IMG/VR virus record: IMGVR_UViG_3300050120_000152
Coordinates: 248,001 to 312,000 of that record
Reading direction: 5' to 3' (one strand)
Length of the DNA stretch: 64,000 nucleotides
In this document: positions 4,973 to 36,021 of the stretch, piece after piece
How the letters are laid out: each line of letters opens with the position of its first letter
Numbering within the stretch: position 1 is the first letter of the stretch
Program-made: the position numbers and the translations under genes
Notes under the pieces: generated by a model
Told to the model about the DNA's origin: nothing
The model's input: only the letters and a program-made list of their open reading frames with translations
The model's database searches: none

Positions 4973-4994
4973 TTATATATCTTATTATCTTCTA

Positions 4995-5002: not shown

Positions 5003-5039
5003 TGCGCTTGTCGTAGATAATTCCATACAATATATCTAT

Positions 5040-5507: not shown

Positions 5508-5611
5508 AAGTTATCCATTCTCTATAAATCAATTTTAAATCCTGTTTAGCTACAGAAACGCCACGCTACCAAATCAGCTGTTGAATATATTTCTTTATGT
5601 CGTGGTATTCC

Positions 5612-5641
5612 AAAATAAAAAGGTCAGATATAACTCTGACC
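5612..5641 (-). terminator. Intrinsic terminator after the GT60 gene
   Basis: Minus strand GGTCAGA-GTTATA-TCTGACC followed by TTTTTATTTT. Confidence 0.55.
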
Positions 5642-5673
5642 AGTTTATCATATCAAATCTAATATATCAATTA

Positions 5674-14907: not shown

Positions 14908-16938
14908 TTATGGTGGACATGTTCCCCACACTGGTTTTGGTTGTGTCCATGCTGGTGTATTTTGTTTGAAGCCTCCCGGTAAAGTTGGGATATTTGTAAC
15001 GCACCATCCAGATAAATTTTGATTAAATATAGAAGCACCATTAAACATTAATGTCATATCTGTTACATTATGTACATTCCATGAACCTATATTTTGATTA
15101 AAGCTTGTAGATGCGCTAAACATATTACTCATGGAAGTTACGTTGCCAGTATTCCAACCTGAGATATTTGCATTAAATGTTGCATTTCTAGCAAACATGT
15201 GAGCCATTGTAGTTACACTACTCACATCCCAACCTGAAATATCACCATCATAAATAGTTACATCCCCGAATTCATTACCAAACATATAACTCATATCTAT
15301 TACGCTACTGGTATCCCATGCGGTTAAATCCTGTGTAAATGCTGAAGAACCAGAAAACATGTTGTTCATGTCTGTTACACTACTCACATTCCAACCTGAA
15401 ATATCTCCATTAAATATTGTATTATTGGCGAACATATGATCCATAGCTGTAACCGTAGAAGTATCCCATGAAGAAATATCTCCATTAAATATTGTATTAT
15501 TGGCGAACATATTTGACATAGTTAATACATTATGGGTATCCCAACCTGAAATATCTCCATTAAACCCAGAACCGACAAACATGTAACTCATATCAGACAC
15601 ATTTCCAGTATTCCAACCTGAAATATCTTGATTGAAAGCACTTGCTCCTGAAAACATCCCATTCATGTTAGTTACATTACTAGTATTCCATGAAGAAATA
15701 TCTTGGTTAATTGTGCTGTCAGCAAATGTTCCACTCATCGAGGTTACATTACTGGTATCCCAACCTGAAATATCACCAGCGAACACCGTATTACCACCAA
15801 ATAACGAATCTATGTTAGTTATATTTGCTGATAATGTTGTCGGTACATCTGTTATATTACTAGAAATTGAGTAATAATTAATTATATTATTACCCCAATC
15901 AGTTATTGCCACGGTAGTACCTTCATCCATGTCGAAACCAATACTCACATAATTACCATATATTTTCACAGTATAATTTTCAATAGCATCATATACGTGA
16001 GAATATCCACTATCACATCCAACATCACCTTCCTCACCAGAGCCGTCTGGTATAGAATCTACATTTCCATCGCCCCAATCAATAGAAGCTGAGTTAGAAG
16101 CACCGCATCCATAAAATGTGCAATTTTGTATTTCAGTAAAGTCAAGAGTAAATGGGGTAGATGAACCAACTGATGGAGTAGGAGTTGGTACGTTTGCAAC
16201 AGGTAATTGTTTAACATCTATTATACTAAAATTATATGTCGTACCCTTGGCTGCTGGGAGTGCATAATTTGGGCTATCAAACAAGTAAACTTTAATTGTT
16301 CCACCAGATGTATTAGAAGTTGTTTTGAATGATGATCTAAAACTTCCGCTAAACTGTTCTTTTAAATTAAAGACGATAATGGGTGATCCATCTTGCAAAT
16401 CTAATTCTATTCTTATAAATTGGCAGGTGCCCTCATTAAATCTTACATAAAATTCATAAATTTGCGATGCTGATAAGTTTAATGGCGCAGTGAAATTAAC
16501 TGAACCATTATTATTAAAATTTGATTTAAATTGTAAGGAATTATCATTATTGATGATAATCGATCCATTGGTAGCTGTCCACATGATACCATCAGTTAAA
16601 TCTGGATAATTAGTGGCGGAACTTGAGGGGGTGGGAGTAGGAGTCTGGGTCGCTTTCGGTGTTCTGGTTATAGCTGGTGTTGGCGATGATGTAATAGTAG
16701 GAGTAGGAGTAACTAATCGCTGTTTAGCCAATTCGGCATAACTTAATAATGGATACAATTGTGAATGGGAATGGGTTTCGTTTAAACCAGTATCATCCAT
16801 TAAGACTTCATAGCTCATTTCATCATCGACTATGCCACTTACAATAGCCACTTTGCCACTACGATAAACTAATTCTATACTTAATACCCAAGCAAAATCA
16901 CCAACATTATATATGTATCCATGTATATTATAATTCAT
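14908..16938 (-). CDS. Probable virion surface protein: Thr/Pro linkers, PKD-like domain and BspA/DUF285 repeats
   Basis: About 10 repeats of F(N)xDISxWxTSxVTxMxxMF; SIDWGDG PKD-like motif; TPTPT tracts. Start placed at ATG 16938, overlapping the upstream stop. Confidence 0.8.
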   Translation of the reverse strand: MNYNIHGYIYNVGDFAWVLSIELVYRSGKVAIVSGIVDDEMSYEVLMDDTGLNETHSHSQLYPLLSYAELAKQRLVTPTPTITSSPTPAITRTPKATQTPTPTPSSSATNYPDLTDGIMWTATNGSIIINNDNSLQFKSNFNNNGSVNFTAPLNLSASQIYEFYVRFNEGTCQFIRIELDLQDGSPIIVFNLKEQFSGSFRSSFKTTSNTSGGTIKVYLFDSPNYALPAAKGTTYNFSIIDVKQLPVANVPTPTPSVGSSTPFTLDFTEIQNCTFYGCGASNSASIDWGDGNVDSIPDGSGEEGDVGCDSGYSHVYDAIENYTVKIYGNYVSIGFDMDEGTTVAITDWGNNIINYYSISSNITDVPTTLSANITNIDSLFGGNTVFAGDISGWDTSNVTSMSGTFADSTINQDISSWNTSNVTNMNGMFSGASAFNQDISGWNTGNVSDMSYMFVGSGFNGDISGWDTHNVLTMSNMFANNTIFNGDISSWDTSTVTAMDHMFANNTIFNGDISGWNVSSVTDMNNMFSGSSAFTQDLTAWDTSSVIDMSYMFGNEFGDVTIYDGDISGWDVSSVTTMAHMFARNATFNANISGWNTGNVTSMSNMFSASTSFNQNIGSWNVHNVTDMTLMFNGASIFNQNLSGWCVTNIPTLPGGFKQNTPAWTQPKPVWGTCPP

Positions 16939-17347
16939 TATTTTTAGCCAATTGTATGATTTCACCATCATTACAGGATATAGCTAATTTAAATTCTATA
17001 TTTTTGGTACCATCTTCAAAATTTATGGGAAGGGTTACGTGTGCTTCATTATCCATTTCACATAAATTGGTCATAATTTCTTTACCTAATAGTGATATTT
17101 TACCAGAACCACAAGCATTTTTCAAACTTTCATATGAGTCCACATATAAAACGTTATCAGAGCCATAGACCACATTAATAATAGGAGATTCGCTTAAACA
17201 ATCAATAGTAACTTTAGTTGATACTGTAACAGGCTCATCTTCTATTGCTTCCACAATAGAAGATTTAAATTCAACCTCAGAATGTGCTAAATCTATATTC
17301 TCGGTAATAATATATTTTAATAATTTTTCTAAATTTTCAAATTTCAT
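16928..17347 (-). CDS. Hypothetical protein, possible head-packaged
   Basis: Translationally coupled to 17347..18909; N-term ends KYIITE. Confidence 0.55.
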   Translation of the reverse strand: MKFENLEKLLKYIITENIDLAHSEVEFKSSIVEAIEDEPVTVSTKVTIDCLSESPIINVVYGSDNVLYVDSYESLKNACGSGKISLLGKEIMTNLCEMDNEAHVTLPINFEDGTKNIEFKLAISCNDGEIIQLAKNNEL

Positions 17348-21758: not shown

Positions 21759-22496
21759 ATGCAATCCTTCAAAGCACATCTGTTAAACGAACTGTTAAAT
21801 GTCAAGCCTATTGAAAATGAGGCATTATTGACCTTAAGAAAAATTATTGATATGATTGATGATGGTCATGTTGATTATTCTACTGATAAAATTAAAATAA
21901 ATGTGGGTCGATTGATTAAAGATAAAAAATATAATAATCTAAACATTTATATACTTAAAGGTAAAAAAAGTCCGCGTATAGGACGGCATATAGAAACAGA
22001 AACTCATGCCATATTTTTATATTCTGAGAGATTGCCAGCAAGAGAAAAAATTGATGATTTCTTATCTGATCAAGAACGTACATCATCATTTAAATTACTA
22101 TTTAAAAAATTCTTCAATGATGCAGTATTTGATGATACTGATAAAGAACAAGATTCATCGTATGAAAAGAAAGCTAATTTGAATACTAGAAAAAGCTTTG
22201 AAAAAGCTTATATCGAGTTAGTCAATAAATTAAATAACCATATCGGTAAATATAGCTCCGCTAAAGGCGATCTTGATGGACGTATTGAAAAATCTAATCA
22301 CGATTTAGGTCATAAAGAAATATTAGGTCTTAGTTTAAGCAAAATCAAGCATGATATGATTGGCAATAGCGTCGAAGAATTCAAATCTAAAGCTATTGAT
22401 ATGTTTGGTAAAGAAAATTATAAATTATTAGATAAAGAATTCAGGGATAAATTGGATTCACGCTTAAATGATTATTACGAACATAAAATAAATTAA
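21759..22496 (+). CDS. Hypothetical, probable head-packaged protein
   Basis: N-term MQSFKAHLLNE; GATAAATA at 21727-21734. Confidence 0.55.
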   Translation: MQSFKAHLLNELLNVKPIENEALLTLRKIIDMIDDGHVDYSTDKIKINVGRLIKDKKYNNLNIYILKGKKSPRIGRHIETETHAIFLYSERLPAREKIDDFLSDQERTSSFKLLFKKFFNDAVFDDTDKEQDSSYEKKANLNTRKSFEKAYIELVNKLNNHIGKYSSAKGDLDGRIEKSNHDLGHKEILGLSLSKIKHDMIGNSVEEFKSKAIDMFGKENYKLLDKEFRDKLDSRLNDYYEHKIN

Positions 22497-22500: not shown

Positions 22501-23316
22501 TTATCCTGTAGGAAAATCTGGAATTTTATCCACATCTACGATAGTAATATCTATAGATTGTGAAGGATCAATAATACCTTCTTGTATAGCATCTAGTAAT
22601 GACTTATTATTTTGTAATATATCCAATCTAACATGAATAGATTTGATAAAGTTATCTTTGAAATCAATAGGTACCTGTAACCATGCATAGCAACTGAATA
22701 CCATACTACTCATGTTTATTTTTCTATCATTCCCTGCTGGATAATTTTCTTCAAATCCAATGTTTTCTAATGTCAACACTGTAATTTTACCACCATCAAA
22801 GGGATCATCGCTTGTTTGAATTTGTAATGATGGGTCAAATGCTGTTAATATTTGTTCGAATATTTGGAATTTTTGCATATCATTTGATGTGAAAATATTC
22901 AATTCGAACGCTAATTTGTAAGGTTGTGGTGTACGTCTGTACATAACTTTCACACCATCAGGTAACGCAGCACCGCGAGGTAGAAATGATCTACGTGATA
23001 CTGTTGCGGTACCCTTACGACGTTCTGGGGCTGGTTGAATATCGGCCAATTTGCAAGAGAACATAGGTAATCTAAGTGGTGAGTTTTGAGTTTGTCCGGC
23101 AATAATAGAATCTACTACTCTATCTACACCACCATACCGAATAGGAACTTCTATAAAATTATTCTGATTATCAAAATCATTCTGACCTATTTTTACATTG
23201 AAAACGCCAAACACGGCCATAAATTGTGTAATATATGACACTAATTGTTCATCATACCAAAAATTTTTGAATGCATCATCAAAATAAGGTTTATGTTCTT
23301 GTATTTCTTTAGTCAT
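22501..23316 (-). CDS. Tail sheath stabilizer / tail terminator (gp15-like)
   Basis: FWYDEQL..Y..QF...F, VPIRYG, RLPMFS, PQPYKL.FEL.I, QIFEQIL..FDPS. Confidence 0.8.
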   Translation of the reverse strand: MTKEIQEHKPYFDDAFKNFWYDEQLVSYITQFMAVFGVFNVKIGQNDFDNQNNFIEVPIRYGGVDRVVDSIIAGQTQNSPLRLPMFSCKLADIQPAPERRKGTATVSRRSFLPRGAALPDGVKVMYRRTPQPYKLAFELNIFTSNDMQKFQIFEQILTAFDPSLQIQTSDDPFDGGKITVLTLENIGFEENYPAGNDRKINMSSMVFSCYAWLQVPIDFKDNFIKSIHVRLDILQNNKSLLDAIQEGIIDPSQSIDITIVDVDKIPDFPTG

Positions 23317-23340: not shown

Positions 23341-25497
23341 TTAAGTGAATACGCCGCCAATGTAAATACTAAAATCGCTAGTCTGCGTAATACAATCAAC
23401 GAGGTTATTCAGACCTATATCTACGAAAGTACTATCCATTATACCAACCGAAGTTAAACGTGCAATATAATTATGCACATGACTCCCTATTGCAGTGAAG
23501 TCGCCACCAATATAAATCTTACCATCAATAACTGTTTGATATAATATTTTAATATACCCATTTACATCTATATCTATAAATGATGAGTCGAGTGTGCCGT
23601 TAGAATTTAATTTCGTTAAATAATTGTAACTATTGGTTCCTGCTGCGGTGAAATCACCACCTACATAAATTTTTGCATCTGCGGTTTGAATGATTGAATA
23701 TACATCATTATTCAAATCTAAATCAGTAAATCCAGTATCAACGGTTCCATCCGAATTTAATCTAGCAATATAATTGCGTGGTATTGATCCAATAGAGGTA
23801 AAATTACCTCCCAAATATATTTTTCCATCCGCCGTTTGATAAATGCAATTAATAGTTGAATTAAAATCAATACTCATAAAACTAGTATCTAATGTTCCAT
23901 CAGAATTCAAGCGAGCAAGATAATTATATGGGATTGATCCAATTGAGCTAAATGATCCTGCAACATATATTTTACCATCAGCTGTTTGATAGATATAATT
24001 TAATGAATTATTAAAATCTATAGGCATGAATGATGTGTCTAATGTACCATCGTAATGCAGTCTTAGGATATAGGTATAAGATAATGAACCATGTGATGTA
24101 AAATTACCTATAACATAAATTTTGTTATCTGATGTTTGGATAATGTCAATAACTGTGCTATCAACATCTAAACTCACATAAGATGTATCTAATGATCCAT
24201 CATAATTTAATCGGTCGAACAATGCCCATGCTGGCGATGATGAATCGCCATTGAAGAATGCTCCCCCAAAATAAATCTGTCCATCGGTAGATTGTATGAT
24301 AGCGTCTACTTGACCATCCAAAGAAAGATTAGTATAACCACGATTTATCGTACCATCTATATTCAATTTAGTCATATAGCCAGCTGCAACAGGTGGGGTT
24401 GATGTTGGTGTAGGAGTTAATGTAGGACTTACTGTGATGGTTGGTGTAATACTTGGCGTAACTGTAATTGTGGGAGTAATACTTGGCGTGATCGTAATTG
24501 ATGGTGTTGGGGTTGGGGTTGGTGTTGGCGTAAGTGATGATCCCGGTGCAGGGGTTGCAGATGGGGTTATTGATGTTGTTGGTGTAATGGTACGAGTTAC
24601 GGTTGGCGTAGGTGTTAGTGTCCGAGTTACTGTTGGAGTTACTGATATTGATATTGTAATTGTTGGTGTGTTAGAAATTGTTGGCGTTACACTCGGTGTA
24701 TCGGAAATAGTTGGGGTAACAGTCGGTGCTGGCGTTGGAGTAGGTGTTTCGGTAGCCATTGGTGTAACTGTAATAGTTGGTGTTATTGATATTGATCCAG
24801 TGACCGATGGGGTAACTGAAATAGTCTGCGTGACTGTTGGAGTCATCGTTGGAGTTGCAGTAGCTGTCGCGGTCATAGTTGGAGTAATTGTTACAGTTTG
24901 TGTTACTGTCAATGTAACGCTTGGTGTAGGCGTTAAGCTTTGTGTCAATGACACACTAGGGGTCAGTGTATGGGTAGGTGTTGGTGTAGCCTGTGGTGTC
25001 TTAGATGGCGTCACAGATACTGTTGCCGTTGGTGTTAGTGTAGGAGTTGATGGTATTTCAGATGAGGTTGATGGAGTTGGTGTAGGAGTTGGAGTCAATG
25101 AGGTTGATGGAGTGATGTTTACTGGTACTAAGGGATCGAGTGCTGATCCAAAATATAATATATTTGCCGTGCCAGTGCAATTACCCAAACGACCAAAATC
25201 CAGCCATATATTATTACTATCAATATAATTTATAATAGGTTCTATTTTAGTTAAAATATTATTAATATCGTTGATGAAAACATTGATGAATAACTGATTA
25301 GAGTTATTTCCATGAAATATTTTCCAAATAGTTGCGGGAACCGTCTGAACATGCTGTGTAGCATGTTCAAATTGTTCAAAATTTTTATCGGTGTTTATTA
25401 CTCTACCTAAATTTTTATCTAATAATAATTTTTTATATTTACTAAATCCACCGGCTATAGGAGTCACTGATGTAGATGGTGTAATTAAGTCATTCAT
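23341..25497 (-). CDS. Probable virion fibre/appendage: long Thr/Pro mucin-like stalk plus delta-60 (DUF5122-like) beta-propeller
   Basis: About 245 aa TP tract, then about 7 repeats Q.DGKIYxGGxFT...YIARLNSDGTLDTSF. Confidence 0.75.
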   Translation of the reverse strand: MNDLITPSTSVTPIAGGFSKYKKLLLDKNLGRVINTDKNFEQFEHATQHVQTVPATIWKIFHGNNSNQLFINVFINDINNILTKIEPIINYIDSNNIWLDFGRLGNCTGTANILYFGSALDPLVPVNITPSTSLTPTPTPTPSTSSEIPSTPTLTPTATVSVTPSKTPQATPTPTHTLTPSVSLTQSLTPTPSVTLTVTQTVTITPTMTATATATPTMTPTVTQTISVTPSVTGSISITPTITVTPMATETPTPTPAPTVTPTISDTPSVTPTISNTPTITISISVTPTVTRTLTPTPTVTRTITPTTSITPSATPAPGSSLTPTPTPTPTPSITITPSITPTITVTPSITPTITVSPTLTPTPTSTPPVAAGYMTKLNIDGTINRGYTNLSLDGQVDAIIQSTDGQIYFGGAFFNGDSSSPAWALFDRLNYDGSLDTSYVSLDVDSTVIDIIQTSDNKIYVIGNFTSHGSLSYTYILRLHYDGTLDTSFMPIDFNNSLNYIYQTADGKIYVAGSFSSIGSIPYNYLARLNSDGTLDTSFMSIDFNSTINCIYQTADGKIYLGGNFTSIGSIPRNYIARLNSDGTVDTGFTDLDLNNDVYSIIQTADAKIYVGGDFTAAGTNSYNYLTKLNSNGTLDSSFIDIDVNGYIKILYQTVIDGKIYIGGDFTAIGSHVHNYIARLTSVGIMDSTFVDIGLNNLVDCITQTSDFSIYIGGVFT

Positions 25498-25521
25498 GTT
25501 CTATTTTCGGTTTAAATATAT

Positions 25522-28500
25522 TTATGTTGGTGTTGGAGTTAAGGTAATAGTAGGAGTTACTGTGACAGTAGCTGTTAATGTTGGTGTAATAGTAGGTGTT
25601 ACTGTGGCAGTAGCTGTTATGGTTGGTGTGATTGTAATAGTAGGAGTGACAGAGATTGTGGGTGTTATGCTTGGAGTGATTGTAATAGTAGGAGTGAGGG
25701 TGGGTGTTGGCGATGGAGTAATACCTACACCAGAAATAGCTTCATAATGTGCAAAAATACTATCATCGGTCAATGCTGCCCCATAAAATGAGAAATTATC
25801 TATTCCACCAACAAAATTGTTGATGCTTGGAATATAGAATGGTGAACCACCTATATTAATACCATAGGTATTTGAAAATAAATTATTTCCTGTAACTGGT
25901 ATGGAAGTTTCTTCTATACCATTCACAAAAATACACATTTCGTCATTCATTCTACGACATGTTATGACATAGGATGAACCATCTGCAGATGTAGTTGATT
26001 GTATTTCGGCGGCTGGGAAATCTGTGGTTGCTATTCTAAAAGCAAATTTTCCAGTCGATGGATCAATAGCTAATTGCATTTGTGGTTGTTGTGACGATGT
26101 ATTATATGGAATATACACCAACATTGGAATAGCAGCATGTTGCTCTGCAGTAGTAGCATTGGTAGTTATTTCAAAAGTAAAATCGCCCGGAATATCTAAG
26201 AAACTACCATATGTACCTAATACCATATTATTTTGAGTGAAGTCATTATTAAACAATATTGATCTTACCGATCCTGCAATCAATCCCGGCTCACCCAATG
26301 TTATATTACCATTATAATAACCATTATTGCCATATAGCGAACTATCTAACGCTGTAGATGTAGCTAAATCGTCAAACTTATAATAAACTAATGGATTATC
26401 ATTCATTACAGCAGAGTCATACATGCTGATAGGCACTGGTGATAATGTTGGTGTGATGGTTGGTGTAATAGTAGTAGTTATTGTTGGTGTAATTGTAGGT
26501 GTTGGTGTTGGAGTATTAGTTGCCATAGGTGTTGGAGTATTAGTTGCGGTAGGTACTGGTGTTCCTGTGGCTACTGGGGTTGTTGTAGGTGTGATAGTTG
26601 TTGTAGGTGTGATAGTAGTAGAAACTGTCAACGATATTGTTGGGGTTAGCGACGGCGTCACGGTTACGGTTGGCGTAATAGTTGTAGAAACTGTAATAGT
26701 AGGTGTTATACTTGGTGTTGGTGATGGTGATGGTAACGGTGGCTGTGTTGGAACTGCAATATTATCAGCAATATCACATGCTCCACCCGGAAGAATATTA
26801 TTGATAATAGTAGTAGGATTAATATCAGACACATTAACATTTTGTGAAACGTCAATAGCAACCCACGAAGTTTTGAAAAAATCTGCGCTATTTTTCTTCA
26901 AACTCATTGCATCATTAAATGCCGCAAAATAAATGTAGTTAATATTAGATATATCAAAATTATCATATATTACATACATGGTATTAACAATGTTATTAAT
27001 ATTATCAAAATTATTAATAGCTAAAAATGAGTTTATATCAATGTTTATAAAATCTTGTGTAGGATCATTTAAAATACTTTGAATGGTAGCCAAAGTTAAG
27101 CTAGATGATGTAAATATTTGTTCAACACCCATACCATATTTGGTATCAGTACCATAGATATTATCAAATAATATTCTATCTAATGTGGGTAACGTTATCG
27201 TAGTATCAATGATTTTATTAGAAACCGGGTATCCTACCAATGCTGATATTAATTTTTCCCATAGATATAGATCGATTTTCTGTGATTGATTTTTTCTAAA
27301 CATTTTCCATTCATAATGAACATTTTTTAATGCTAATGGTGATTTAACCGGATTTGTGGTTGAATAATCGTAAATATCACCATTTATTGGCATTCTATCT
27401 CTTAAAGTAAAATCACGAGTAAATCTAAGCGCATAACGATTATCATCATTTACTAAGCCCTTTAGACCGCGAATGATCATTTTATTGAATCTAGCAGGTA
27501 AATCGTAAGCTGCACCATCAAATACATCACCAAACACAATGCCATATCCATCATCATTGTAACGCATTCCCGATAATATCATATATGGGTTTGGGTTAGT
27601 AATCAAATCGGATTGCGCCTGTATGATTGTTGATTGATAATTGCTAGTATTAGTAATGGTTGTCGGTGAACCGTTTACCCAGAAATAATAATACGGTACT
27701 AATGCACCATTTGTATTGCTTACGACATAAGTGGTAGAGTATGGGGTATCATACTTATAAACCATATTGGTAATGTCATCAGCGGTGGGGATAGGTGCAG
27801 GTAGCACTACTGTAATATAATCTTGTATATCAGGTTTATTGATCTGTCCCGGTAATAGTGCACCATACATATAATCGTAAAAATTATATAGTGTTAAATC
27901 CACACTCAAATCATATGTACCGTTACGATATATATTTACACTTCCTGAGAATGGAACTACGGTGGTTGTTTGAATTAATGCAGCTAATATACTAAATCGT
28001 TGATCTGAAACTTGATTCCAATTAGGATTTGTTATAGAGCCTTCATTATAATATAGGTTAACTATTGGGGTACCAGAGTTTGGATACTGCGAAGTATACT
28101 CTGATGGAGGGACTAAAGATTCCGTCCATTGATATAAGTTCAGTTTACCAATATTCGATAATTTACCCCAATTAGCTATTCTATCATTAATATTAGGAAA
28201 TACGCCATGATCAAAATATGGGATATAATCAAGTTCAGTAGTATCCATCCAAACTTTACCAGCTTTATATTTTAACCATACATCATTATAAATATTTCCT
28301 GTAAAATCAATTGAATAGGTTGCTGGATCATATGCAGTCTTTATGTCAACTAACGAATAGGCATATTGATCATGTTGATTTAATGCGGGATTCCATATAG
28401 CAATTTGGTTAACGATTACGCCCGCAGTCTTATCTACAAATACTGAAGAATTTTGCGCATTATAGTTATAGATCAAACAACTTATTTGGACATTATTTAA

Positions 28501-31500
28501 TATAGTTGGATCGGTCGAGAACACCACAACTTGATTATTGATCATGGTATAATCTTGCTGATTAACTAATGATTTAGTATTCCCATTGGCATCCAAATAT
28601 GTAATGATAACGCCATCATAAATATCACCCAATGATAATATAATACGAGAATTTATATATAATAAATCGCTTTCCTGTAATGATATAATTTGTTTTACTG
28701 ATGCATTAAAGAAATATGATTGATTGGGGGCTATTTTATTTAATACATCGGGCTGATCCCACCATCGGGTATTATCGGTTAAAGCAATTCCAGTAAACGT
28801 ATCATCTAATGCATTTTCATCTGGTGCAATAAACTCTGCTCTAAACTCTGCTCCTATAGAATCGGAACGTTTTAATTTTAATTCAATATAATCTTTTTCT
28901 TTAGAATCGCCAAATCTAGCTAATTTATATACCCAGAATTCATCTAGAGTGGCTTTATTAAACAAGCTTTGGTTAGTATAGGCATCTATAGCTAAGTTTG
29001 TGCCTTTATTCTTAATCATACCACGCCAAAAAATGAAATCAGATTTTGAATTTACATTCAAGTCCGCCATATAATCTGATTGACCAGAATATCCCAAAGA
29101 CTTTCTTACTTCTTTAATTAAGGGTTTAGATTCTAATACGTTATAGGTATCATACATGTAACGTAAATCGGTCACTGCAGATTCAAAGTTTTGCATTAAA
29201 TCATCATTATGTATAATGAATCCGCCTGTATTTGGTCTTAATGTCATTCCGGGCTGGCGATTGAATTCTACAAAGAAACGTGGAGTTCTTAAACCCAAGA
29301 AAGAATCATATATTAAATTGTTTGAAACGGAATAATTATTTAAGGATAAAATATGTTCATATGCATCAATGAAAGCATGTATTCCGGCAATATATGATGG
29401 AAATGCTGAAATGGTATTTGATATAATTTGTTCGTTCGTTAATGATATTTGACTATATTCATCATGACGAAGTACCATCAATTTATCATGCGTTAACATT
29501 TGACCATACTGATTATATATTCTTTGATTAGTTAAAATATCATTACGATCATTACCTATCACATCAGATAAAATACCTTGACTATGATTTATACGCATAG
29601 CTTTTTTATAAGGATTTATTAAAAATTGTGGGTAATTTATTTGAGGTCTATAAATTTTGAATGATGATATGCCCGATCCTGATGTACTAAATGGTATAAA
29701 GATGCCCGCTAATGCATCGGAATTGGTATAAGCTAACTGAAAACCCATTCCATCAGATGATGGAATGACATAATAAGGAACGAACTGCTTTAATGGATTA
29801 TCAAATGGTTGTGGTAGTATTGAAGCATCAGATGCTGTTATCACTACTCGTTGCGCTTTATTGATTTGTGCACTAGGAATTGAAACATTAGAATCAGTAT
29901 ATAGAAATCGACTATTTACATAATCAGATTTTATTTGATATTCAAGATCGGTAGTTTGTTGTGATGTTGAAAGGACGTATAACCAATCGATAAAATATTC
30001 TATTTCTAATTGCCAATCATTTAATCTTCCAGTATTAGGATCAGAGTTATCAATGTCTTCCGTCATTGTTGAGAACCCGATGCTTGCTAGATAATCGGAA
30101 TATCCATCAATAAAATCTATCATTTGTTGTATATTTGTAATATACAACGGTTGAGAGGCATTTATAATGGTTCTAGTATCTGAGTAATGCTTTCTCCATG
30201 AGGTATTAACAGCATTTCCACCCAATGCTTTGAAGGTGGTTTGAATACGTCCTACAAATGGTGCAGATAATGATGTAGTCAAAGGTGTTATAGCACCCTT
30301 ATTAGCTAAAGCTGCATCAGGATTATTACTCAAGGAAAATGAATAATTATCCAATCTAATAAGATAATATGGAATGAATTCGTTAAATGGTGCAGGTAAT
30401 GCCGTATCAGTTGTTAAATATAATTCGGTTCCCGTTACCCAATCATCAGGTAATGTTCTACGAACAGATGGATAGATTTGCCCATCTATGGTATCAGAGG
30501 TTAAAGTTATAGTTTCATTGACAAATATTTTTGTTGATGAGTTAGCAATATCATAATAAATTGATTTTATTGTGTATGTACCGTTGAACTGTGTCGAATG
30601 GTTGATGACAAATGAAGTTCCTTCGACAAATGAAGTTGTTAAATTACCACTCAAATCAAAATATTGTTGGAATAAAAATCCAGTGTTAATAGATGCTGAT
30701 ATACCAGCATAATTATCATGTAAAGTAGAAAATAGACCATTATCATTGATGGTGATAGTTGTGTTTGCCTGAATGACGATATTTCCGTTACTTAAGTAAG
30801 CTGATGCCGCCGTACCTAATTGGTCATTCAATGTTATAATAGCTGCACTAATTGTAGGAGCATTAGTAGTATTTAATGTTAATATAATTGAATCAGAGCC
30901 GATACTAATTGATGCGGTATATGACATTGTACCAATATAGTTAGTCGAATTACTTAAATCAGCAGTTTCACTATAATTTATAGTTGAAATAGTAGCAGGG
31001 GTAGCAATACCAGCATCAATAATATCATATACGGAAATTTCAAATACCGGATTGCCAGTCAAAGATTTAAACCCAAAGTTTTCTTTTGGATAATATAAAA
31101 TATTGGTATTTGTGGGCGATGTTGATCCAAATTGTACTGTCCACCCTGTACCTAAATTACGTGTTTTTGAATATTTTGATGGTGAATTTAATACAGTACC
31201 AATCAATGAATCAAAACTTATATCATTGAATCCAAATGTTTTCTTTACATTTATTGTATAATCTTTGTTTGTAATATCAAAATTTTCATTATCGATATTT
31301 AAAGATGGGGTATCAATATATGAACCTATTAGATAGGATAGTTGGGTATCCCATGTTTTCCAATATGATCTGAATTGTGATGCCTCGCCATCATAACCAT
31401 GATATCTATTATAATTAATGTACCATTGATTTAAGCCGTTAGAATAGAAAGCTTTTCCATTAGCATCAATGTCACCATGGAAAATAGTATCTTTATGAGA

Positions 31501-34500
31501 AAATACTCGTTTTGTGGTATCATCTACATTTAAGCAATTTATCTTTTGTAATTTATTACCATTAAACGTCTCATAATTAAAATTAATAGGATCAATCTTA
31601 AATGATACTATCATCTGATCGTACAAATATTGCGCAGAAGTCTTCCATTCCCATTCATTGGGGTTTCCATCACCAAATGTATAATCTACATTTGGTGTGA
31701 TAATTTCCTGATTTAAATTGGCATCATATGGTGTTCTAATTTTTGCGGCCGTAGTATTCGCACTATTCCAAAAGGGTGGTAATAAATCATCAGGATTATA
31801 ACCATCTAATGTAGGAGTAGCTGCCATATTTACTGGTATGTAAAGATATGTTATTCCAGCTTGGCCTACTAATCCAGAGGACATATTACCATTAGGTAAT
31901 ATTTTACCTGACGGTACTGTACCATTGATAATATTGTTCCACATGAAACCATTCCAATGTCTTATACCAGTATTGTCGTGGTATATAGAATCCCACCATG
32001 TTGGTTTATCTTTATAATTTTGTAATTTCCACGGCTCAAGGTTTGGATATGGGGTTTGGTATAATTTGGTGTACAAACTTTGGTAGCTAGATGCTAAATC
32101 ATGTGACACGTTTCCTGTAACTGGATGTTCTTGAATTGTTGTAAATTCATAGTTCCATGTAAATGCATTGTTTGTTCTGAAATATGTATTCGTCAATGGA
32201 GTAGCAATATTACTATATGATGCCCATGCCCCAAATTGAGTGGCATTTAAATTTATAAATCTATTATTTGTATTATTTGTAGTAGCGTCATATATTAAAT
32301 TATCGTATATTGGACAAGCATCATACAAATTCTGTTCAACTTGTAACATGACATTAGCTAATATTTGATGGAAATCTACCAATTCCCATATAGTTGAAGT
32401 TGCTAATCTATATAATTTTCTAGTTTTTGCAACTGTATTAACACGAATTATTAAACTCCCAAATGACACGCCATTTGGAAATGGCGTGTCATCTGACGAG
32501 ACGGTTTGCTGAATTATACTAACCTGTTGTAATAATGTAGCAAAAAATAATTGAATTACTGATGGTTGAAGAATAATGTCCTGAATATGTCCATCATGGC
32601 ACGATACGGCATTTAGTTTTAATTTATCGTCAAATAAAGTGTAACAAACTTTCTTTTCAGCTAAACCAAAATAGGGAAGTGTTGCAACCCAATTTTCCAT
32701 ACCAACGCCAGTAGATTGATTATAAGTTGTGCTATCGCCAAACCATTCATTAAATTTTTCGTTTGATTTGTAAATGGTTATTAACAAATTATTTAAATAT
32801 GTTTGAAAAGATGATAGCGATGTATATGAAGTTTGATTTACTAATGATGATACAATATTTTTTATATATTCTTCTTGAATGAAATTATATCCATTTAAAT
32901 ACTGATCATGGCCGAATTGTATCAATTGTAGCGGGTTTACATTATTAACTAATGTAGATGATATAGATAAATCCATCCCATTATTATGTTCTTTAATTGT
33001 ACCACCTAATCCATAATTTATATTATCACTTAAATGAATTTGATTGATGTTTGTAGAATTTGGCACCCCCGGTACTTTTTGTGCTAAAATAATACTATTA
33101 AAATGTGATAGACATTCAGACAAATTAATATCTGATCTAAGTTGATGATCAATATTATAATACCATGGATTAGGCAATTCCCATGAACCATCAGCTAATA
33201 ATTGTGGAACATATTGCTCATTGTTTAATCCACGTTTCCATATAGTTTGCAATGGATAATTTGGTTGTGAAAAGTTTTTATATGAATATAATTCACCTGT
33301 ATCTGGATTAGATAGTTCTTGTACAAACCCATAATCATTCGTTAATGTATTATTGACGATTCGCTTAAGAATATAATTATTAACGGGATAAGTTTGATCT
33401 TCACGATATGTAAATATTCGCGATGCTATGGTTTCGGCCTTTCCTTCTACATCATATACAGTAAACCAAGGGTAAATATTAGTGGTATCCTTGCTTTGTT
33501 CAATTTTTCTAAATGATGTTATATTCAACAATTCATACGGAATCGTAGGGTCTACTAGGTTAGCATTAGTAACCATAGTTACAGCACGACGGCCAATATC
33601 ACTCAAAGCATATTCGCCCAGTTCAATACGGAGTAAATCATCTTTACCTAACGATACTGATTGGTCAAAAATGATAGTACCGACATAATCAGGGTAAATA
33701 TCGGATCGGCTATCTTGATAATTACCGTATTGACGAATATTATTAATATACACCCGAAGATCGCCTTCCTGATAGTCATCATAAAGAACTAACTGATGTA
33801 AGGAATTGTCAAATCTAATAGCAACACCAATATTATAATCATTTATATAAGAGAATGTCTGCCACATCAAACCGACATTGGTTTCATAACCTGCTCCTAT
33901 ATTAGAATAGGATGTTACGAAGACTTGTAACATGGGGTTAGGTACTGGTGCAATACTTGTTGCAGATACATCTTTAACACCGTAGAACATCCAATGTTTA
34001 TCATAACCCAACCATTGATCACCGGCTACTGTTTTTTCTGGCCCAACGGAAGACCCAACCGGAATATCAAATGGATTTGCTATATTCACCGTTAATGTTA
34101 TATAGGATTGATACATTGAGTTAGGAGTTTGCTGGGTATAGGCTACATTGGATACGACATAATATCCATTATTACCTACTGTACCCGATATCTTTATTCT
34201 TGAACCAATGGCAATATCATTGGTAACATTACCTAATGAGGGTGCCAATAAAATAGTATTTTCAGTTACAAAAATATAAGCCGGATTCAATGGATCGATA
34301 TTAGTGATATCTGAAATTTCAAATAATGTTGGTTCGAAAATAGTGTCGGAATAGATGTTAGATGTTAATGTTCTATATTTCCAATTATAAGTCGTTAATG
34401 ACGTTGTAGATAGCTCTAGGAATGGATCGAACTCTATGATAGGTAGTTGTGCGCGAATTTTACCAGAGAATGACTGTAACTCATTCTTATGAACCCACTG

Positions 34501-36021
34501 ATTGCTTGCTGACCATGGATCGGTTTGCGTTAATGACAATTTATATCGTTGATGTGCCGCTTCAACTAATAATGAAATATGATATACTTGTGGCACCCAA
34601 TCGTGTCCAGACCATTGCATAATTACATCATTCACCGAATCTATCCATATTTGATAGATTGTGGGGAACGATGGCGCAGTTGCACTTACGAGATAATCAT
34701 ATATGGTTTGTCTTACGATAGTGTAATGTAAATCTTCTTTAGTGAACATACGAATAGCGGCATCAACACCAATAAAATTATGTTGCACGGAAATAATGGT
34801 ATATGATCCGCTATTAGCACCATTAGTTAATTGTAAAATATCTCCCGGTCTGATTTCATTTGTAATAAAATCATAAGTAGTATCGTATATACCATGATTA
34901 CCTAAGAAAGAATACCCGTTGGTTGAACTCAATAACGGCAAATTCCTATCCCAGATTAATGATCCTAAATTGATATCATTCCACATGGAATTATATTGAA
35001 TAATAGAATCATCTGTGATGGAATTATATTCAGCATCCGCCAATGATGCCATAGGCATCATTGAAATTGTATGCCATGCGTCTGCGGCTGCAACAAGTTG
35101 ATTTACTATAATCTTTGTACTATTAGTAGAAACATTGAAGGTTGATGTAGTAGTAGACCATAACGTATCATAAATGATATTAGATTTGGTTAAAAATATA
35201 TAATCTTTAGTAAATATTTCACTTAAATCTCCCGCAACTATGAATGAATTATCATTACCTGTAGACAATATAGATAATCCAAAATTACACATTCCGGTGA
35301 ATGTACTTCCATCCATATTATTCAATACACTAATTTGTGTTAAGCCTGTGGTAGGATTTAATGATATGGATGATATTTGATTAATCGCTGAGCCTGTAGT
35401 ATTGTTGTTTTGAGTCAATAATATATAATCATATGCCTTGAAAGACGATAAAATGTTTCCTTGGACAGTTATGTTAAAAGAATCGAGTTGGGTAACCGCA
35501 AATACTGGATTGACCTTGTTTATAGTATTTTTATATTCTGTACTTCTACCCAATGCCCAATTAGTTTCATTTTTTATGGTTATATAATCGGGAACATCAT
35601 TAATATTGGGAGAATTCCAATAATAGTCTTGATAATTAATTAATTTATCAATGTCGATAGGTGGCGCATAGTTAAATTGAAGAGTTTTACCCCATTCATT
35701 AAATTGGGTAATATCTACATCAAGTCTAGACAAACGTTGTAAATAATCTTGAAAAGTTAAATATGCTGTTTCGGAACCTACGGCAACAGATGCCACCGGC
35801 TGTAACTGTTCAGTCTGACGATAAATTGTTTTTTCTATGATTTGCTTTAATGGATTATTTGGATCAACATCACCGATAATACCAACAACATGTTGGTATT
35901 CATCCTTTGTTAAAAAACGATTGAACAAATTTTCATTTATATTTTTAAGAAAAGCCGACTGAAGTTGCGCTGGCAGATAATCATTTAAATTTGTTCGTTG
36001 CTTTGTGTAATCACTCATCAA
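25522..36021 (-). CDS. Giant baseplate wedge protein (3499 aa) with C-terminal TP tract, LamG-like domain, TP tract
   Basis: Follows gp6-like gene; N-term PPIDIDKLINYQDYYW; FFKTSW near end of core; NPLVYYKFDD...GGIDNFSFYG.AL LamG-type domain. Confidence 0.75.
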   Translation of the reverse strand: MMSDYTKQRTNLNDYLPAQLQSAFLKNINENLFNRFLTKDEYQHVVGIIGDVDPNNPLKQIIEKTIYRQTEQLQPVASVAVGSETAYLTFQDYLQRLSRLDVDITQFNEWGKTLQFNYAPPIDIDKLINYQDYYWNSPNINDVPDYITIKNETNWALGRSTEYKNTINKVNPVFAVTQLDSFNITVQGNILSSFKAYDYILLTQNNNTTGSAINQISSISLNPTTGLTQISVLNNMDGSTFTGMCNFGLSILSTGNDNSFIVAGDLSEIFTKDYIFLTKSNIIYDTLWSTTTSTFNVSTNSTKIIVNQLVAAADAWHTISMMPMASLADAEYNSITDDSIIQYNSMWNDINLGSLIWDRNLPLLSSTNGYSFLGNHGIYDTTYDFITNEIRPGDILQLTNGANSGSYTIISVQHNFIGVDAAIRMFTKEDLHYTIVRQTIYDYLVSATAPSFPTIYQIWIDSVNDVIMQWSGHDWVPQVYHISLLVEAAHQRYKLSLTQTDPWSASNQWVHKNELQSFSGKIRAQLPIIEFDPFLELSTTSLTTYNWKYRTLTSNIYSDTIFEPTLFEISDITNIDPLNPAYIFVTENTILLAPSLGNVTNDIAIGSRIKISGTVGNNGYYVVSNVAYTQQTPNSMYQSYITLTVNIANPFDIPVGSSVGPEKTVAGDQWLGYDKHWMFYGVKDVSATSIAPVPNPMLQVFVTSYSNIGAGYETNVGLMWQTFSYINDYNIGVAIRFDNSLHQLVLYDDYQEGDLRVYINNIRQYGNYQDSRSDIYPDYVGTIIFDQSVSLGKDDLLRIELGEYALSDIGRRAVTMVTNANLVDPTIPYELLNITSFRKIEQSKDTTNIYPWFTVYDVEGKAETIASRIFTYREDQTYPVNNYILKRIVNNTLTNDYGFVQELSNPDTGELYSYKNFSQPNYPLQTIWKRGLNNEQYVPQLLADGSWELPNPWYYNIDHQLRSDINLSECLSHFNSIILAQKVPGVPNSTNINQIHLSDNINYGLGGTIKEHNNGMDLSISSTLVNNVNPLQLIQFGHDQYLNGYNFIQEEYIKNIVSSLVNQTSYTSLSSFQTYLNNLLITIYKSNEKFNEWFGDSTTYNQSTGVGMENWVATLPYFGLAEKKVCYTLFDDKLKLNAVSCHDGHIQDIILQPSVIQLFFATLLQQVSIIQQTVSSDDTPFPNGVSFGSLIIRVNTVAKTRKLYRLATSTIWELVDFHQILANVMLQVEQNLYDACPIYDNLIYDATTNNTNNRFINLNATQFGAWASYSNIATPLTNTYFRTNNAFTWNYEFTTIQEHPVTGNVSHDLASSYQSLYTKLYQTPYPNLEPWKLQNYKDKPTWWDSIYHDNTGIRHWNGFMWNNIINGTVPSGKILPNGNMSSGLVGQAGITYLYIPVNMAATPTLDGYNPDDLLPPFWNSANTTAAKIRTPYDANLNQEIITPNVDYTFGDGNPNEWEWKTSAQYLYDQMIVSFKIDPINFNYETFNGNKLQKINCLNVDDTTKRVFSHKDTIFHGDIDANGKAFYSNGLNQWYINYNRYHGYDGEASQFRSYWKTWDTQLSYLIGSYIDTPSLNIDNENFDITNKDYTINVKKTFGFNDISFDSLIGTVLNSPSKYSKTRNLGTGWTVQFGSTSPTNTNILYYPKENFGFKSLTGNPVFEISVYDIIDAGIATPATISTINYSETADLSNSTNYIGTMSYTASISIGSDSIILTLNTTNAPTISAAIITLNDQLGTAASAYLSNGNIVIQANTTITINDNGLFSTLHDNYAGISASINTGFLFQQYFDLSGNLTTSFVEGTSFVINHSTQFNGTYTIKSIYYDIANSSTKIFVNETITLTSDTIDGQIYPSVRRTLPDDWVTGTELYLTTDTALPAPFNEFIPYYLIRLDNYSFSLSNNPDAALANKGAITPLTTSLSAPFVGRIQTTFKALGGNAVNTSWRKHYSDTRTIINASQPLYITNIQQMIDFIDGYSDYLASIGFSTMTEDIDNSDPNTGRLNDWQLEIEYFIDWLYVLSTSQQTTDLEYQIKSDYVNSRFLYTDSNVSIPSAQINKAQRVVITASDASILPQPFDNPLKQFVPYYVIPSSDGMGFQLAYTNSDALAGIFIPFSTSGSGISSFKIYRPQINYPQFLINPYKKAMRINHSQGILSDVIGNDRNDILTNQRIYNQYGQMLTHDKLMVLRHDEYSQISLTNEQIISNTISAFPSYIAGIHAFIDAYEHILSLNNYSVSNNLIYDSFLGLRTPRFFVEFNRQPGMTLRPNTGGFIIHNDDLMQNFESAVTDLRYMYDTYNVLESKPLIKEVRKSLGYSGQSDYMADLNVNSKSDFIFWRGMIKNKGTNLAIDAYTNQSLFNKATLDEFWVYKLARFGDSKEKDYIELKLKRSDSIGAEFRAEFIAPDENALDDTFTGIALTDNTRWWDQPDVLNKIAPNQSYFFNASVKQIISLQESDLLYINSRIILSLGDIYDGVIITYLDANGNTKSLVNQQDYTMINNQVVVFSTDPTILNNVQISCLIYNYNAQNSSVFVDKTAGVIVNQIAIWNPALNQHDQYAYSLVDIKTAYDPATYSIDFTGNIYNDVWLKYKAGKVWMDTTELDYIPYFDHGVFPNINDRIANWGKLSNIGKLNLYQWTESLVPPSEYTSQYPNSGTPIVNLYYNEGSITNPNWNQVSDQRFSILAALIQTTTVVPFSGSVNIYRNGTYDLSVDLTLYNFYDYMYGALLPGQINKPDIQDYITVVLPAPIPTADDITNMVYKYDTPYSTTYVVSNTNGALVPYYYFWVNGSPTTITNTSNYQSTIIQAQSDLITNPNPYMILSGMRYNDDGYGIVFGDVFDGAAYDLPARFNKMIIRGLKGLVNDDNRYALRFTRDFTLRDRMPINGDIYDYSTTNPVKSPLALKNVHYEWKMFRKNQSQKIDLYLWEKLISALVGYPVSNKIIDTTITLPTLDRILFDNIYGTDTKYGMGVEQIFTSSSLTLATIQSILNDPTQDFINIDINSFLAINNFDNINNIVNTMYVIYDNFDISNINYIYFAAFNDAMSLKKNSADFFKTSWVAIDVSQNVNVSDINPTTIINNILPGGACDIADNIAVPTQPPLPSPSPTPSITPTITVSTTITPTVTVTPSLTPTISLTVSTTITPTTTITPTTTPVATGTPVPTATNTPTPMATNTPTPTPTITPTITTTITPTITPTLSPVPISMYDSAVMNDNPLVYYKFDDLATSTALDSSLYGNNGYYNGNITLGEPGLIAGSVRSILFNNDFTQNNMVLGTYGSFLDIPGDFTFEITTNATTAEQHAAIPMLVYIPYNTSSQQPQMQLAIDPSTGKFAFRIATTDFPAAEIQSTTSADGSSYVITCRRMNDEMCIFVNGIEETSIPVTGNNLFSNTYGINIGGSPFYIPSINNFVGGIDNFSFYGAALTDDSIFAHYEAISGVGITPSPTPTLTPTITITPSITPTISVTPTITITPTITATATVTPTITPTLTATVTVTPTITLTPTPT

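What the first reader, a model, noticed from the sequence alone, without database searches (positions are those of the whole stretch)
23341..25497. Lollipop fibre: about 245-residue mucin-like stalk carrying a delta-60 beta-propeller
A short N-terminal domain is followed by an almost pure T/P/S/V/I tract (about 24390-25125) and then a roughly 7-repeat propeller. Unmodified, such a tract would be floppy and protease-sensitive; dense O-glycosylation would make an extended rod. The tract is imperfect at DNA level, so composition rather than sequence seems selected.
Basis: partly seen in the sequence, partly recalled or inferred. Interest (0 to 1): 0.62.

Follow-up and report, generated by a model that had tools for sequence, protein, structure and literature searches.

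The report
Jumbo-phage fibre with Thr-Pro stalk
This gene encodes a tail-module fibre of a 340-kb phage: a small anchor domain, a 248-residue stalk in which every second residue is Thr or Ser, and a seven-bladed propeller head; the phage and its relatives also carry a protist-type enzyme that probably coats such stalks with sugar.

Summary
Window 23341-25497 (-) encodes a 718-aa protein with three parts. Residues 1-124 are a beta-sandwich domain, 125-372 are a T/P/S/I/V tract, and 373-718 are a 7-bladed delta-60 (DUF5122) propeller (AF2 pLDDT 92).

It is a strict dipeptide polymer, [S/T]-[P/I/V/L/A], kept in one register for 248 residues.

The gene lies in the baseplate/tail module of a complete XacN1-like jumbo myophage, directly upstream of gp15. 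This position is conserved in relatives. The orthologues in the two closest relatives have the anchor and the tract but no head, so anchor plus tract is the conserved core.

The genome has 16 proteins with such tracts, and a GT60 polypeptide GlcNAc-transferase gene next to a carbamoyltransferase gene. GT60 and the tracts co-occur:
- all 8 GT60-positive records tested have tracts, and the GT60-negative relative RsoM2USA has none;
- 10 of 30 viral contigs chosen only for their tracts carry GT60.

XacN1 virions contain periodate-Schiff-positive proteins (PMC5852040).

The best reading is an O-glycosylated stalk fibre. The fibre reading is well supported. Glycosylation is inferred, not shown. I rate it a new variant of known kinds.

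The parts
25126..25497 (-). Residues 1-124. A conserved but unstructured leader (F-x-x-Y-K-K-x-x-L-D-x-x-x-G, about residues 17-32) is followed by a 7-strand beta-sandwich (residues 43-116). I read this as the fibre anchor.
   Evidence: AF2 residues 43-116 have pLDDT 83-97. An exhaustive HMMER search found only 13 relatives, several of them running straight into a T/P tract. BFVD gave 36 phage matches at E<=1e-3, including collagen-repeat fibre proteins, an Mtd_N protein and tail fibre proteins. The domain HMM also hits XacN1 ORF370 and ORF372, Xoo-sp13_332 and the RAS14 gene upstream of gp15, plus two more proteins of this genome.
24382..25125 (-). Residues 125-372: a 248-residue strictly alternating [S/T]-[P/I/V/L/A] tract, read as the stalk and the proposed O-glycan acceptor.
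   Evidence: The same rule holds in all 18 tracts of this genome and in relatives.
23344..24381 (-). Residues 373-718: a seven-bladed delta-60 / DUF5122 beta-propeller head.
   Evidence: Thousands of bacterial homologues at 32-42% identity, and three paralogues in this genome.
22501..23316 (-). gp15-type tail sheath stabiliser, the conserved downstream neighbour.
   Evidence: PF16724 E 3e-31 and phrog_227. A gp15 homologue directly follows the anchor-tract gene in L020, L021, L026 and L027.
25522..36021 (-). 3499-aa virion structural protein, the upstream neighbour. It has two tracts of the same kind (residues 3085-3205 and 3426-3499).
   Evidence: phrog_10938 E 4.5e-43; tracts.
5674..7059 (-). 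GT60-family glycosyltransferase (polypeptide alpha-GlcNAc-transferase family). It is soluble, and it is the proposed modifier of the tracts.
   Evidence: PF11397 E 1e-76 over residues 4-326. No hydrophobic segment. Invariant D113-S-H115 and D166-F-D168. Only 4 of 50,697 cultured phage records have a homologue, all from the XacN1 group.
2642..4972 (-). NodU/CmcH-type carbamoyltransferase, conserved next to GT60.
   Evidence: PF16861 E 1e-57 and PF02543 E 1e-24. It is adjacent to GT60 at 50-80% identity in XacN1, Xoo-sp13, RAS14 and G001. RsoM2USA has only a 28% identical distant one.
40..1743 (-). HtrL_YibB-family protein, possibly a second sugar-handling enzyme of the same island.
   Evidence: PF09612 E 3.4e-17. 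Its role is not tested.
41882..44323 (-). gp5-like baseplate hub lysozyme with a tract of the same kind (residues 205-257) just before the lysozyme domain.
   Evidence: PF00959 E 3e-35 at residues 268-388; tract.
14908..16971 (-). DUF285 (BspA-like repeat) protein with a tract at residues 82-127. It is another member of the anchor / tract / head design.
   Evidence: PF03382 E 1e-95.

Best explanation
The gene encodes a virion fibre of a complete 340-kb XacN1-like jumbo myophage. The N-terminal leader and beta-sandwich dock the protein onto the tail, either at the neck (gp15 end) or at the baseplate periphery; which one is not resolved. The 248-residue [S/T]-[P/I/V/L/A] tract forms an extended stalk of about 60-85 nm. 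The seven-bladed delta-60 propeller is an interchangeable head that binds some cell-surface ligand.

I propose that before assembly, in the host cytoplasm, the phage's soluble GT60 enzyme transfers GlcNAc from UDP-GlcNAc to the in-phase Thr/Ser residues (up to 113 sites, about +23 kDa). The sugar may then be modified by the adjacent carbamoyltransferase. The result would be a stiff, protease-resistant, hydrated mucin-like rod.

Shown: the architecture, the period-2 rule, the propeller fold, the genomic context, and the GT60-tract co-occurrence. Inferred: virion location, glycosylation, enzyme-substrate pairing, stalk length and head function.
For: Architecture and fold.

Structural module: gp5-like hub, gp25-like and gp6-like wedge, a 3499-aa virion protein, then the target, gp15, tail tube and head closure.

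Synteny: anchor-tract gene followed by gp15 in four other contigs.

Anchor fold: shared with phage collagen-repeat, Mtd_N-type and tail-fibre proteins, and with large tail-module proteins of XacN1 and Xoo-sp13.

Genome-wide design: 16 proteins carry tracts that join N-terminal domains to propeller, DUF285 or lysozyme domains.

GT60: full-length family match. The family initiates mucin-type O-GlcNAc on Ser/Thr-rich domains in protists (PMC8724618). T. cruzi gp72 has a similar PTVTPTP... glycan-bearing domain (PMC3630849).

Co-occurrence:
- The T-P-T-x-T-x-T-P DNA pattern gave 29, 59, 23 and 47 matches in this genome, XacN1, RAS14 and Xoo-sp13, and 0 in GT60-negative RsoM2USA. The reversed-pattern control gave 0.
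- Four more GT60-positive IMG/VR records gave 17-159 matches of the one-codon-longer pattern T-P-T-x-T-x-T-P-T.
- 32 of 80 GT60 loci have a strict alternating tract within 10 kb.
- 10 of 30 records picked only for their tracts carry PF11397, including 6 of the 8 records of at least 100 kb. Only 4 of 50,697 cultured phages have a GT60 homologue.

XacN1 virions show at least 2 periodate-Schiff-positive bands (PMC5852040).

No thymidylate-synthase-family hydroxymethylase was found in this genome, which weakens a DNA target for GT60.
Against: - No direct evidence that this protein is in virions or carries sugar.
- The glycoprotein bands of XacN1 were not identified, and EM saw no fibres there.
- The co-occurrence is partly phylogenetic, because many records belong to one clade.
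- Tracts also occur without GT60, for example in G005 (complete, 181 kb) and in a complete provirus.
- GT60 lies beside replication genes (PolB, 5'-3' exonuclease), not in the tail module.
- Anchor fold matches to solved structures are at noise level (best Z 6.6).
- The Tet/JBP search had no positive control.
- The propeller gives no clue to its ligand.
Confidence: 0.55

Rival explanations
1. Unglycosylated spacer. The tract is a Pro-Thr-type linker, as in bacterial cellulases. It is extended and protease-poor by sequence alone. GT60 then acts on something else: DNA bases, host envelope precursors, or other proteins.
For: Pro at every 2-10 residues plus beta-branched T/V/I, and almost no K/R or aromatic residues. 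GT60 sits beside PolB and an exonuclease. Some tract-bearing viral records lack GT60.
Against: The hydroxyl residue is kept at 113 of 124 in-phase positions, which a mere spacer does not need. There is strong GT60-tract co-occurrence, including a near relative that lacks both. XacN1 virions contain glycoproteins. No hydroxymethyl-pyrimidine route was found.
Confidence: 0.25
2. Ordered oligomeric rod. Three chains associate through the Pro/aliphatic face of the period-2 tract, with the Thr face outward. This would be a structured stalk analogous to the collagen-like stalks that follow the same anchor fold in other phages. It is compatible with or without glycans.
For: A single register without a slip over 248 residues puts hydroxyl and aliphatic/Pro side chains on opposite faces of an extended strand. 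The anchor fold recurs in front of collagen triple-helix repeats and in trimeric fibre proteins.
Against: Pro at 39% of one phase hinders regular sheet hydrogen bonding. Tract lengths vary freely among paralogues and orthologues, as expected of a linker.
Confidence: 0.15
3. Not a virion part. The protein acts inside or on the infected cell, for example as a decoy or a surface-modifying adhesin.
For: There is no proteomic evidence for this phage, and bacterial delta-60 proteins are typically secreted surface proteins.
Against: No signal peptide is evident. The gene is embedded between a virion structural protein and gp15 on the same strand, with 21-24 nt gaps. The synteny is conserved, and the anchor fold is shared with fibre proteins.
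Confidence: 0.05

Closest known systems
Protist mucin-type O-GlcNAc glycosylation by GT60 pp-alpha-GlcNAc-transferases (Dictyostelium, Trypanosoma cruzi)
   Same: Same enzyme family (PF11397 E 1e-76, full length). The acceptor-like domains are rich in Thr/Pro, and T. cruzi gp72 carries a PTVTPTP...-type domain with the same alternation.
   Different: This is a bacterial virus. The enzyme has no membrane anchor, so it would act in the cytoplasm rather than the Golgi. It has a 135-residue C-terminal extension of unknown function. Activity and acceptor are untested.
Mycobacteriophage virion glycosylation (Freeman et al. 2023, as cited in PMC12619734)
   Same: Phage-encoded glycosyltransferases modify structural proteins in the host cytoplasm.
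   Different: There the glycans sit at the C-termini of capsid and tail-tube subunits and the enzymes are of other families. Here there are long internal acceptor tracts in fibre, baseplate and hub proteins, together with a GT60 enzyme.
Pro-Thr linkers of bacterial cellulases (e.g. Cellulomonas CenA/Cex); from my own knowledge, not checked here
   Same: Alternating P-T chains that are extended, O-glycosylated in the native host, and join two folded domains.
   Different: Those linkers are about 20-40 residues. Here the tract is 248 residues (up to about 500 in relatives), with I/V/L sharing the non-hydroxyl phase.
Serine-rich-repeat adhesins of Gram-positive bacteria (GspB/Fap1 type); from my own knowledge
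   Same: A long hydroxy-amino-acid repeat stalk is O-GlcNAcylated in the cytoplasm and presents a binding domain.
   Different: Different enzymes (GtfA/B, GT4), Ser-rich dipeptides, cell-wall anchoring. There is no sequence relation.
Phage fibres with collagen-like stalks, Mtd-type receptor-binding proteins, and T4 fibritin whiskers
   Same: An N-terminal anchor of similar fold, followed by a thin stalk and a distal binding domain. The gene position before the neck genes resembles T4 wac (my own knowledge of the T4 map).
   Different: No sequence-family membership (no Pfam or PHROG hit for the anchor). The stalk chemistry is entirely different.
Bacterial delta-60 / DUF5122 propeller proteins (many are T9SS cargo of Bacteroidota)
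   Same: The head domain is an ordinary member of the family at 32-42% identity.
   Different: Here it is fused to a phage anchor and tract. The function of the family is itself unknown.

Membership tests
delta-60 repeat / DUF5122 beta-propeller | Repeats matched by TIGR02608 and PF17164 above their curated cut-offs | tested here: met
   117 bits against a cut-off of 76.5; 201.6 bits against 27
delta-60 repeat / DUF5122 beta-propeller | Closed multi-bladed propeller fold | tested here: met
   AF2 gives 7 blades, pLDDT 92.1, pTM 0.91. The best PDB matches are 7-bladed designer propellers, E 2e-10
Mucin-like domain | Long tract dominated by Ser/Thr/Pro | tested here: met
   48% S+T and 20% P over 248 residues
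Mucin-like domain | Dense O-glycosylation of the tract | not testable with these tools
   Only indirect evidence: GT60 co-occurrence and periodate-Schiff-positive virion bands in XacN1
GT60 pp-alpha-GlcNAc-transferase (neighbouring gene 5674-7059) | Full-length match to PF11397 above cut-off | tested here: met
   259 bits against a cut-off of 21, profile positions 1-350 of 352
GT60 pp-alpha-GlcNAc-transferase (neighbouring gene 5674-7059) | Metal-binding DxH/DxD motif of GT-A enzymes | tested here: inconclusive
   D113-S-H115 and D166-F-D168 are invariant in 5 phage homologues. Which one is catalytic was not established, and there is no solved relative
GT60 pp-alpha-GlcNAc-transferase (neighbouring gene 5674-7059) | Transfers GlcNAc to peptide Thr/Ser | not testable with these tools
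   Needs an enzyme assay
T4-type tail fibre / fibritin families | Sequence-family match | tested here: not met
   No Pfam, PHROG or NCBIfam hit outside the propeller and a low-complexity PHROG
Phage fibre N-terminal beta-sandwich (Mtd_N-like / collagen-repeat fibre N-domain) | Fold similarity to N-terminal domains of phage fibre proteins | tested here: met
   BFVD gave 36 phage matches at E<=1e-3, with TM by query about 0.4-0.54. The PDB matches are only at noise level
Phage fibre N-terminal beta-sandwich (Mtd_N-like / collagen-repeat fibre N-domain) | Sequence match to PF18454 Mtd_N | tested here: not met
   No hit at E<=0.01
Virion structural protein | Detected in purified particles | not testable with these tools
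   The genome is metagenomic. The XacN1 proteome figure is not held as text

The most novel reading that the evidence does not exclude
A large, mostly uncultured set of phages, the XacN1-like jumbo myophages and at least one other lineage, runs its own mucin-type O-glycosylation system. A soluble protist-type GT60 enzyme, with a conserved carbamoyltransferase partner that may O-carbamoylate the sugar, would read a simple dipeptide code, [S/T]-[P/V/I/L/A] in unbroken register. That code is written into dozens of tail, baseplate and fibre proteins. The glycosylated tracts themselves, which have no head in the closest orthologues, would be the functional 'hairs' of the virion. Propeller and BspA-like heads would be swappable extras.
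Probability: 0.4. Interest if true: 0.8.

Novelty: new variant of a known kind. Interest (0 to 1): 0.64.

Why it matters
Glycosylation of phage structural proteins is known from only a few cases. If the proposal holds, this would be a second, mechanistically different system.
- It has a recognisable acceptor code.
- Its enzyme family was previously tied to protist mucins.
- It has a cultured, testable model: XacN1, whose unexplained virion glycoproteins and 'missing' tail fibres it would account for.

It would also give a rule for spotting glycan-coated fibres in metagenomic phage genomes. It bears on how jumbo phages present receptor-binding heads, resist proteases, or stick to polysaccharide matrices. 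The propeller itself is ordinary.

Tried and rejected
- DNA megablast of the region against 50,697 phage records: no match.
- Word search for the anchor domain among proteins of 395-1256 aa: nothing. The exhaustive search then found 13 small relatives.
- The search for related loci with gp15 alone: nothing.
- PDB sequence searches for the propeller and for GT60: nothing.
- Foldseek and VIA-align of the anchor against the PDB: only generic Ig-like matches at noise level. I draw no function from them.
- Propeller fold search: generic 7-bladed propellers only, no ligand clue.
- XacN1 ORF369 and ORF370 against the target and the giant neighbour by BLASTP: only tract-to-tract similarity.
The docking site is therefore open.
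- Literature searches for GT60 in phages: no functional study found. The 'moraphage' paper concerns another lineage.
- Tet/JBP search: empty, but without a positive control, so it is uninformative.
- gp15 search in four distant GT60-positive records: empty and without a control. It only suggests that these are other lineages.
- One mistaken call with too short a protein.
- Sequencing-run and read tools were not used. No other genetic code was needed.
- The idea that the tract is a recent slippage array was rejected: the longest exact repeat is 16 nt and codon use is mixed.
Full report
**The sequence.** Window 23341-25497 (-) is a single open frame of 718 codons. It has three parts.
- Residues 1-124 are of ordinary composition.
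- Residues 125-372 (window 24382-25125) are T 35%, P 20%, S 12%, I 8% and V 7%, with 8 charged residues and no aromatic residue or Cys within 125-372.
- Residues 373-718 match DUF5122 (PF17164, E 1.4e-60) and the delta-60 repeat (TIGR02608, E 2.3e-34), both over their curated cut-offs.

Seven repeats of about 50 residues are visible. AlphaFold2 on a 20-sequence alignment gives a closed seven-bladed propeller with pLDDT 92.1 and pTM 0.91. Its nearest solved structures are generic 7-bladed propellers.

It is a dipeptide polymer. One phase holds T or S at 113 of 124 positions. The other holds P (48), I (20), V (19), L (9) or A (8). The register does not slip once in 248 residues. The lag-2 autocorrelation of S/T is 0.80, against a maximum of 0.18 in 500 shuffles. 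Forty-five of 51 prolines follow a Thr.

At the DNA level the tract is indeed not a recent array. The longest exact repeat is 16 nt, all four Thr codons are used, and TRF finds only short local arrays. Selection therefore acts on the protein, and on a positional rule rather than on composition alone. The ACN/CCN codons explain the local GC rise and the skew peak. They also explain the spurious 'GVGV' ORFs on the opposite strand.

**Where the gene lies.** The window is bases 248001-312000 of a 340,344-bp IMG/VR virus record with direct terminal repeats, rated complete, at 34.7% GC. By gp15, its nearest cultured relatives are the jumbo myophages XacN1, RsoM2USA, Xoo-sp13, CM1 and RAS14.

All on the minus strand, the order around the gene is:
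1. gp5-like hub lysozyme
2. a second hub-like protein
3. gp25-like wedge
4. gp6-like wedge
5. a 3499-aa virion structural protein
6. the target
7. gp15 tail sheath stabiliser
8. tail tube
9. head closure

. This is the slot where receptor-binding and whisker genes usually sit. The XacN1 authors found no tail-fibre homologues and saw no fibres by EM.

**The N-terminal domain.**
- Pfam, PHROGs and a word search found nothing.
- An exhaustive HMMER search of 1.8 billion representatives found 13 relatives. Most are 110-130-aa proteins, and several run straight into a T/P tract.
- In two metagenomic contigs the homologue is followed at once by a gp15 homologue, at 61% and 47% identity.
- AlphaFold2 gives a confident 7-strand beta-sandwich for residues 43-116. 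The leader is conserved but unstructured.
- Matches to solved structures are at noise level.
- In BFVD there are 36 phage matches at E<=1e-3. They include collagen-triple-helix-repeat proteins, an Mtd_N protein and tail fibre proteins.
- A profile of the domain also hits XacN1 ORF370 and ORF372, Xoo-sp13_332 (annotated as a host specificity protein) and the RAS14 gene upstream of gp15. It hits two more proteins of this genome as well, one of them another propeller protein.

I read this domain as a reusable fibre anchor.

**Orthologues.** In the two closest relatives the gene before gp15 has the anchor and a tract but no head.
- G001 (350 kb, GT60 77% identical): anchor plus a 316-residue tract that runs to the stop codon.
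- G004: anchor plus a 219-residue tract and about 36 further residues.

XacN1 ORF369, in the same slot, has a 253-residue tract. The conserved core is thus anchor plus tract, and the propeller is an addition in this phage. This genome has three further DUF5122 proteins and several DUF285 (BspA-like) proteins built on the same plan. In all, 16 proteins carry such tracts, among them the hub lysozyme and the giant neighbour. Every tract obeys the same alternation: 71-98% in this genome, and 91-97% with 0-3 slips over 190-500 residues in relatives.

**The glycosylation lead.** Window 5674-7059 (-) encodes a full-length GT60 enzyme (PF11397, E 1e-76).
- It has no hydrophobic segment, and it has invariant D-S-H and D-F-D motifs.
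- GT60 enzymes initiate mucin-type O-GlcNAc on Ser/Thr-rich domains in Dictyostelium and T. cruzi (PMC8724618).
- T. cruzi gp72 carries its glycans on a PTVTPTP...-type domain with the same alternation (PMC3630849).
- Next to GT60 lies a NodU/CmcH-type carbamoyltransferase, and nearby an HtrL_YibB protein.
- The GT60-carbamoyltransferase pair is conserved in XacN1 (ORF334/ORF333), Xoo-sp13, RAS14 and G001.

**Co-occurrence tests.**
1. Among 50,697 cultured phage records, only XacN1, Xoo-sp13, CM1 and RAS14 have a GT60 homologue, at 58-61% identity. That is much higher than their gp15 identity.
2. A DNA pattern for T-P-T-x-T-x-T-P matches 29, 59, 23 and 47 times in this genome, XacN1, RAS14 and Xoo-sp13. 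It matches 0 times in RsoM2USA, which is as close by gp15 but lacks GT60. The reversed pattern matches 0 times everywhere.
3. Four further GT60-positive IMG/VR records have 17-159 matches of the one-codon-longer pattern T-P-T-x-T-x-T-P-T.
4. A GT60 profile finds 118 IMG/VR contigs. In 32 of the 80 loci kept, a strict alternating tract lies within 10 kb. There are none in 1.47 Mb of reversed sequence.
5. In the reverse direction, 10 of 30 IMG/VR records chosen only for three or more pattern matches carry PF11397 (E<=1e-48). That includes 6 of the 8 records of at least 100 kb. Four of these GT60-positive records were searched for a gp15 like ours and none was detected, which hints at other lineages (no control).

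There are exceptions: one complete 181-kb record and one complete provirus have tracts but no GT60.

**Experimental support from a relative.** XacN1 virions contain at least two periodate-Schiff-positive proteins. The authors suggested that the phage glycosyltransferases make them, but they did not identify the proteins or link them to GT60 or to the tracts (PMC5852040).

**The DNA-target rival.** Phage glycosyltransferases often modify hydroxymethylated bases, and GT60 here lies beside PolB and an exonuclease. However, the genome has no thymidylate-synthase-family enzyme, the family that includes dCMP/dUMP hydroxymethylases. The Tet/JBP search was empty but had no control.

**Mechanism proposed.** The anchor docks the protein on the tail. 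The tract is glycosylated in the cytoplasm by GT60 on its in-phase hydroxyls, and the sugar is perhaps carbamoylated. It then forms an extended rod. At 0.25-0.34 nm per residue, 248 residues give about 60-85 nm (inference). The calculated mass is 76.5 kDa, and full occupancy would add about 23 kDa. The propeller serves as a distal adhesin of unknown specificity. Its relatives are mostly surface proteins of Bacteroidota and other bacteria, which is at best a weak hint about the host.

A trimeric ordered rod is a live alternative, because the period-2 pattern segregates the two faces and the same anchor fold precedes collagen-like stalks elsewhere.

**Verdict.** The fibre reading is well supported by context (about 0.8). 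Glycosylation by GT60 is the best explanation but is inferred (about 0.55). The single gene is a new variant of known kinds: a phage fibre, a Pro-Thr linker and a delta-60 propeller. The wider pattern, GT60 together with a dipeptide acceptor code across many phage genomes, was not found described in my literature searches. It is directly testable in XacN1.

Noticed in passing
window 40-7059 (-): A sugar-enzyme island: an HtrL_YibB-family protein (40-1743), an unknown 282-aa ORF, a 776-aa NodU/CmcH-type carbamoyltransferase (2642-4972), an unknown 155-aa ORF and GT60 (5674-7059). The GT60-carbamoyltransferase pair is conserved in XacN1, Xoo-sp13, RAS14 and G001. This suggests a carbamoylated sugar.
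   Followed up: partly
window 25522-36021 (-): A 3499-aa virion structural protein (phrog_10938) has two alternating tracts. A roughly 220-residue domain (about 3206-3425) lies between them, and the protein ends in a tract. No Pfam family matches anywhere in it.
   Followed up: partly
window 41882-44323 (-): The gp5-like baseplate hub lysozyme has an alternating tract (residues 205-257) as the linker just before the lysozyme domain. The tracts are therefore not confined to fibres.
   Followed up: partly
window 24434-25228 (+), 25391-25747 (+), 26423-26932 (+): Long 'GVGVGV' ORFs on the opposite strand of the tracts. They are antisense artefacts of ACN/CCN codons, not genes.
   Followed up: yes
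genome G000:C1:227958-240657 (outside the window; L014): A cluster of three more DUF5122 propeller proteins (746, 749 and 1050 aa, the last with about 13 blades' worth of repeats), a 718-aa DUF285 protein and a 300-aa tract protein, all on the domain-tract-head plan. It looks like a second fibre locus.
   Followed up: partly
L024 record (G003) 40109-42930, and L031:1-1812 (-): One related contig encodes tracts of about 500 to about 900 residues, with T-P-T-N-T-V-type units. One 502-residue stretch shows 97% alternation and no register slip.
   Followed up: partly
window 21759-22496 (+): A 245-aa Lys/Asp-rich ORF on the opposite strand is wedged between gp15 and the tail tube gene. It has no family match.
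   Followed up: no
window 19415-20386 (-) and 21009-21620 (-): Two tail-tube-like genes (323 and 203 aa, both phrog_4542). The longer one has a Pro/Thr-rich C-terminal tail.
   Followed up: no
L018:21119-21346 (+) (Ralstonia phage RsoM2USA): The GT60-negative, tract-free relative still has a small stand-alone ORF matching the anchor domain profile (E 8e-9).
   Followed up: no
window 5674-7059 (-), residues 327-461: GT60 has a 135-residue C-terminal extension outside the Pfam domain. It is less conserved (31% invariant columns against 52%) but has an invariant D-x-D-F-x-Y-V-G block. It may be an acceptor-binding module.
   Followed up: no
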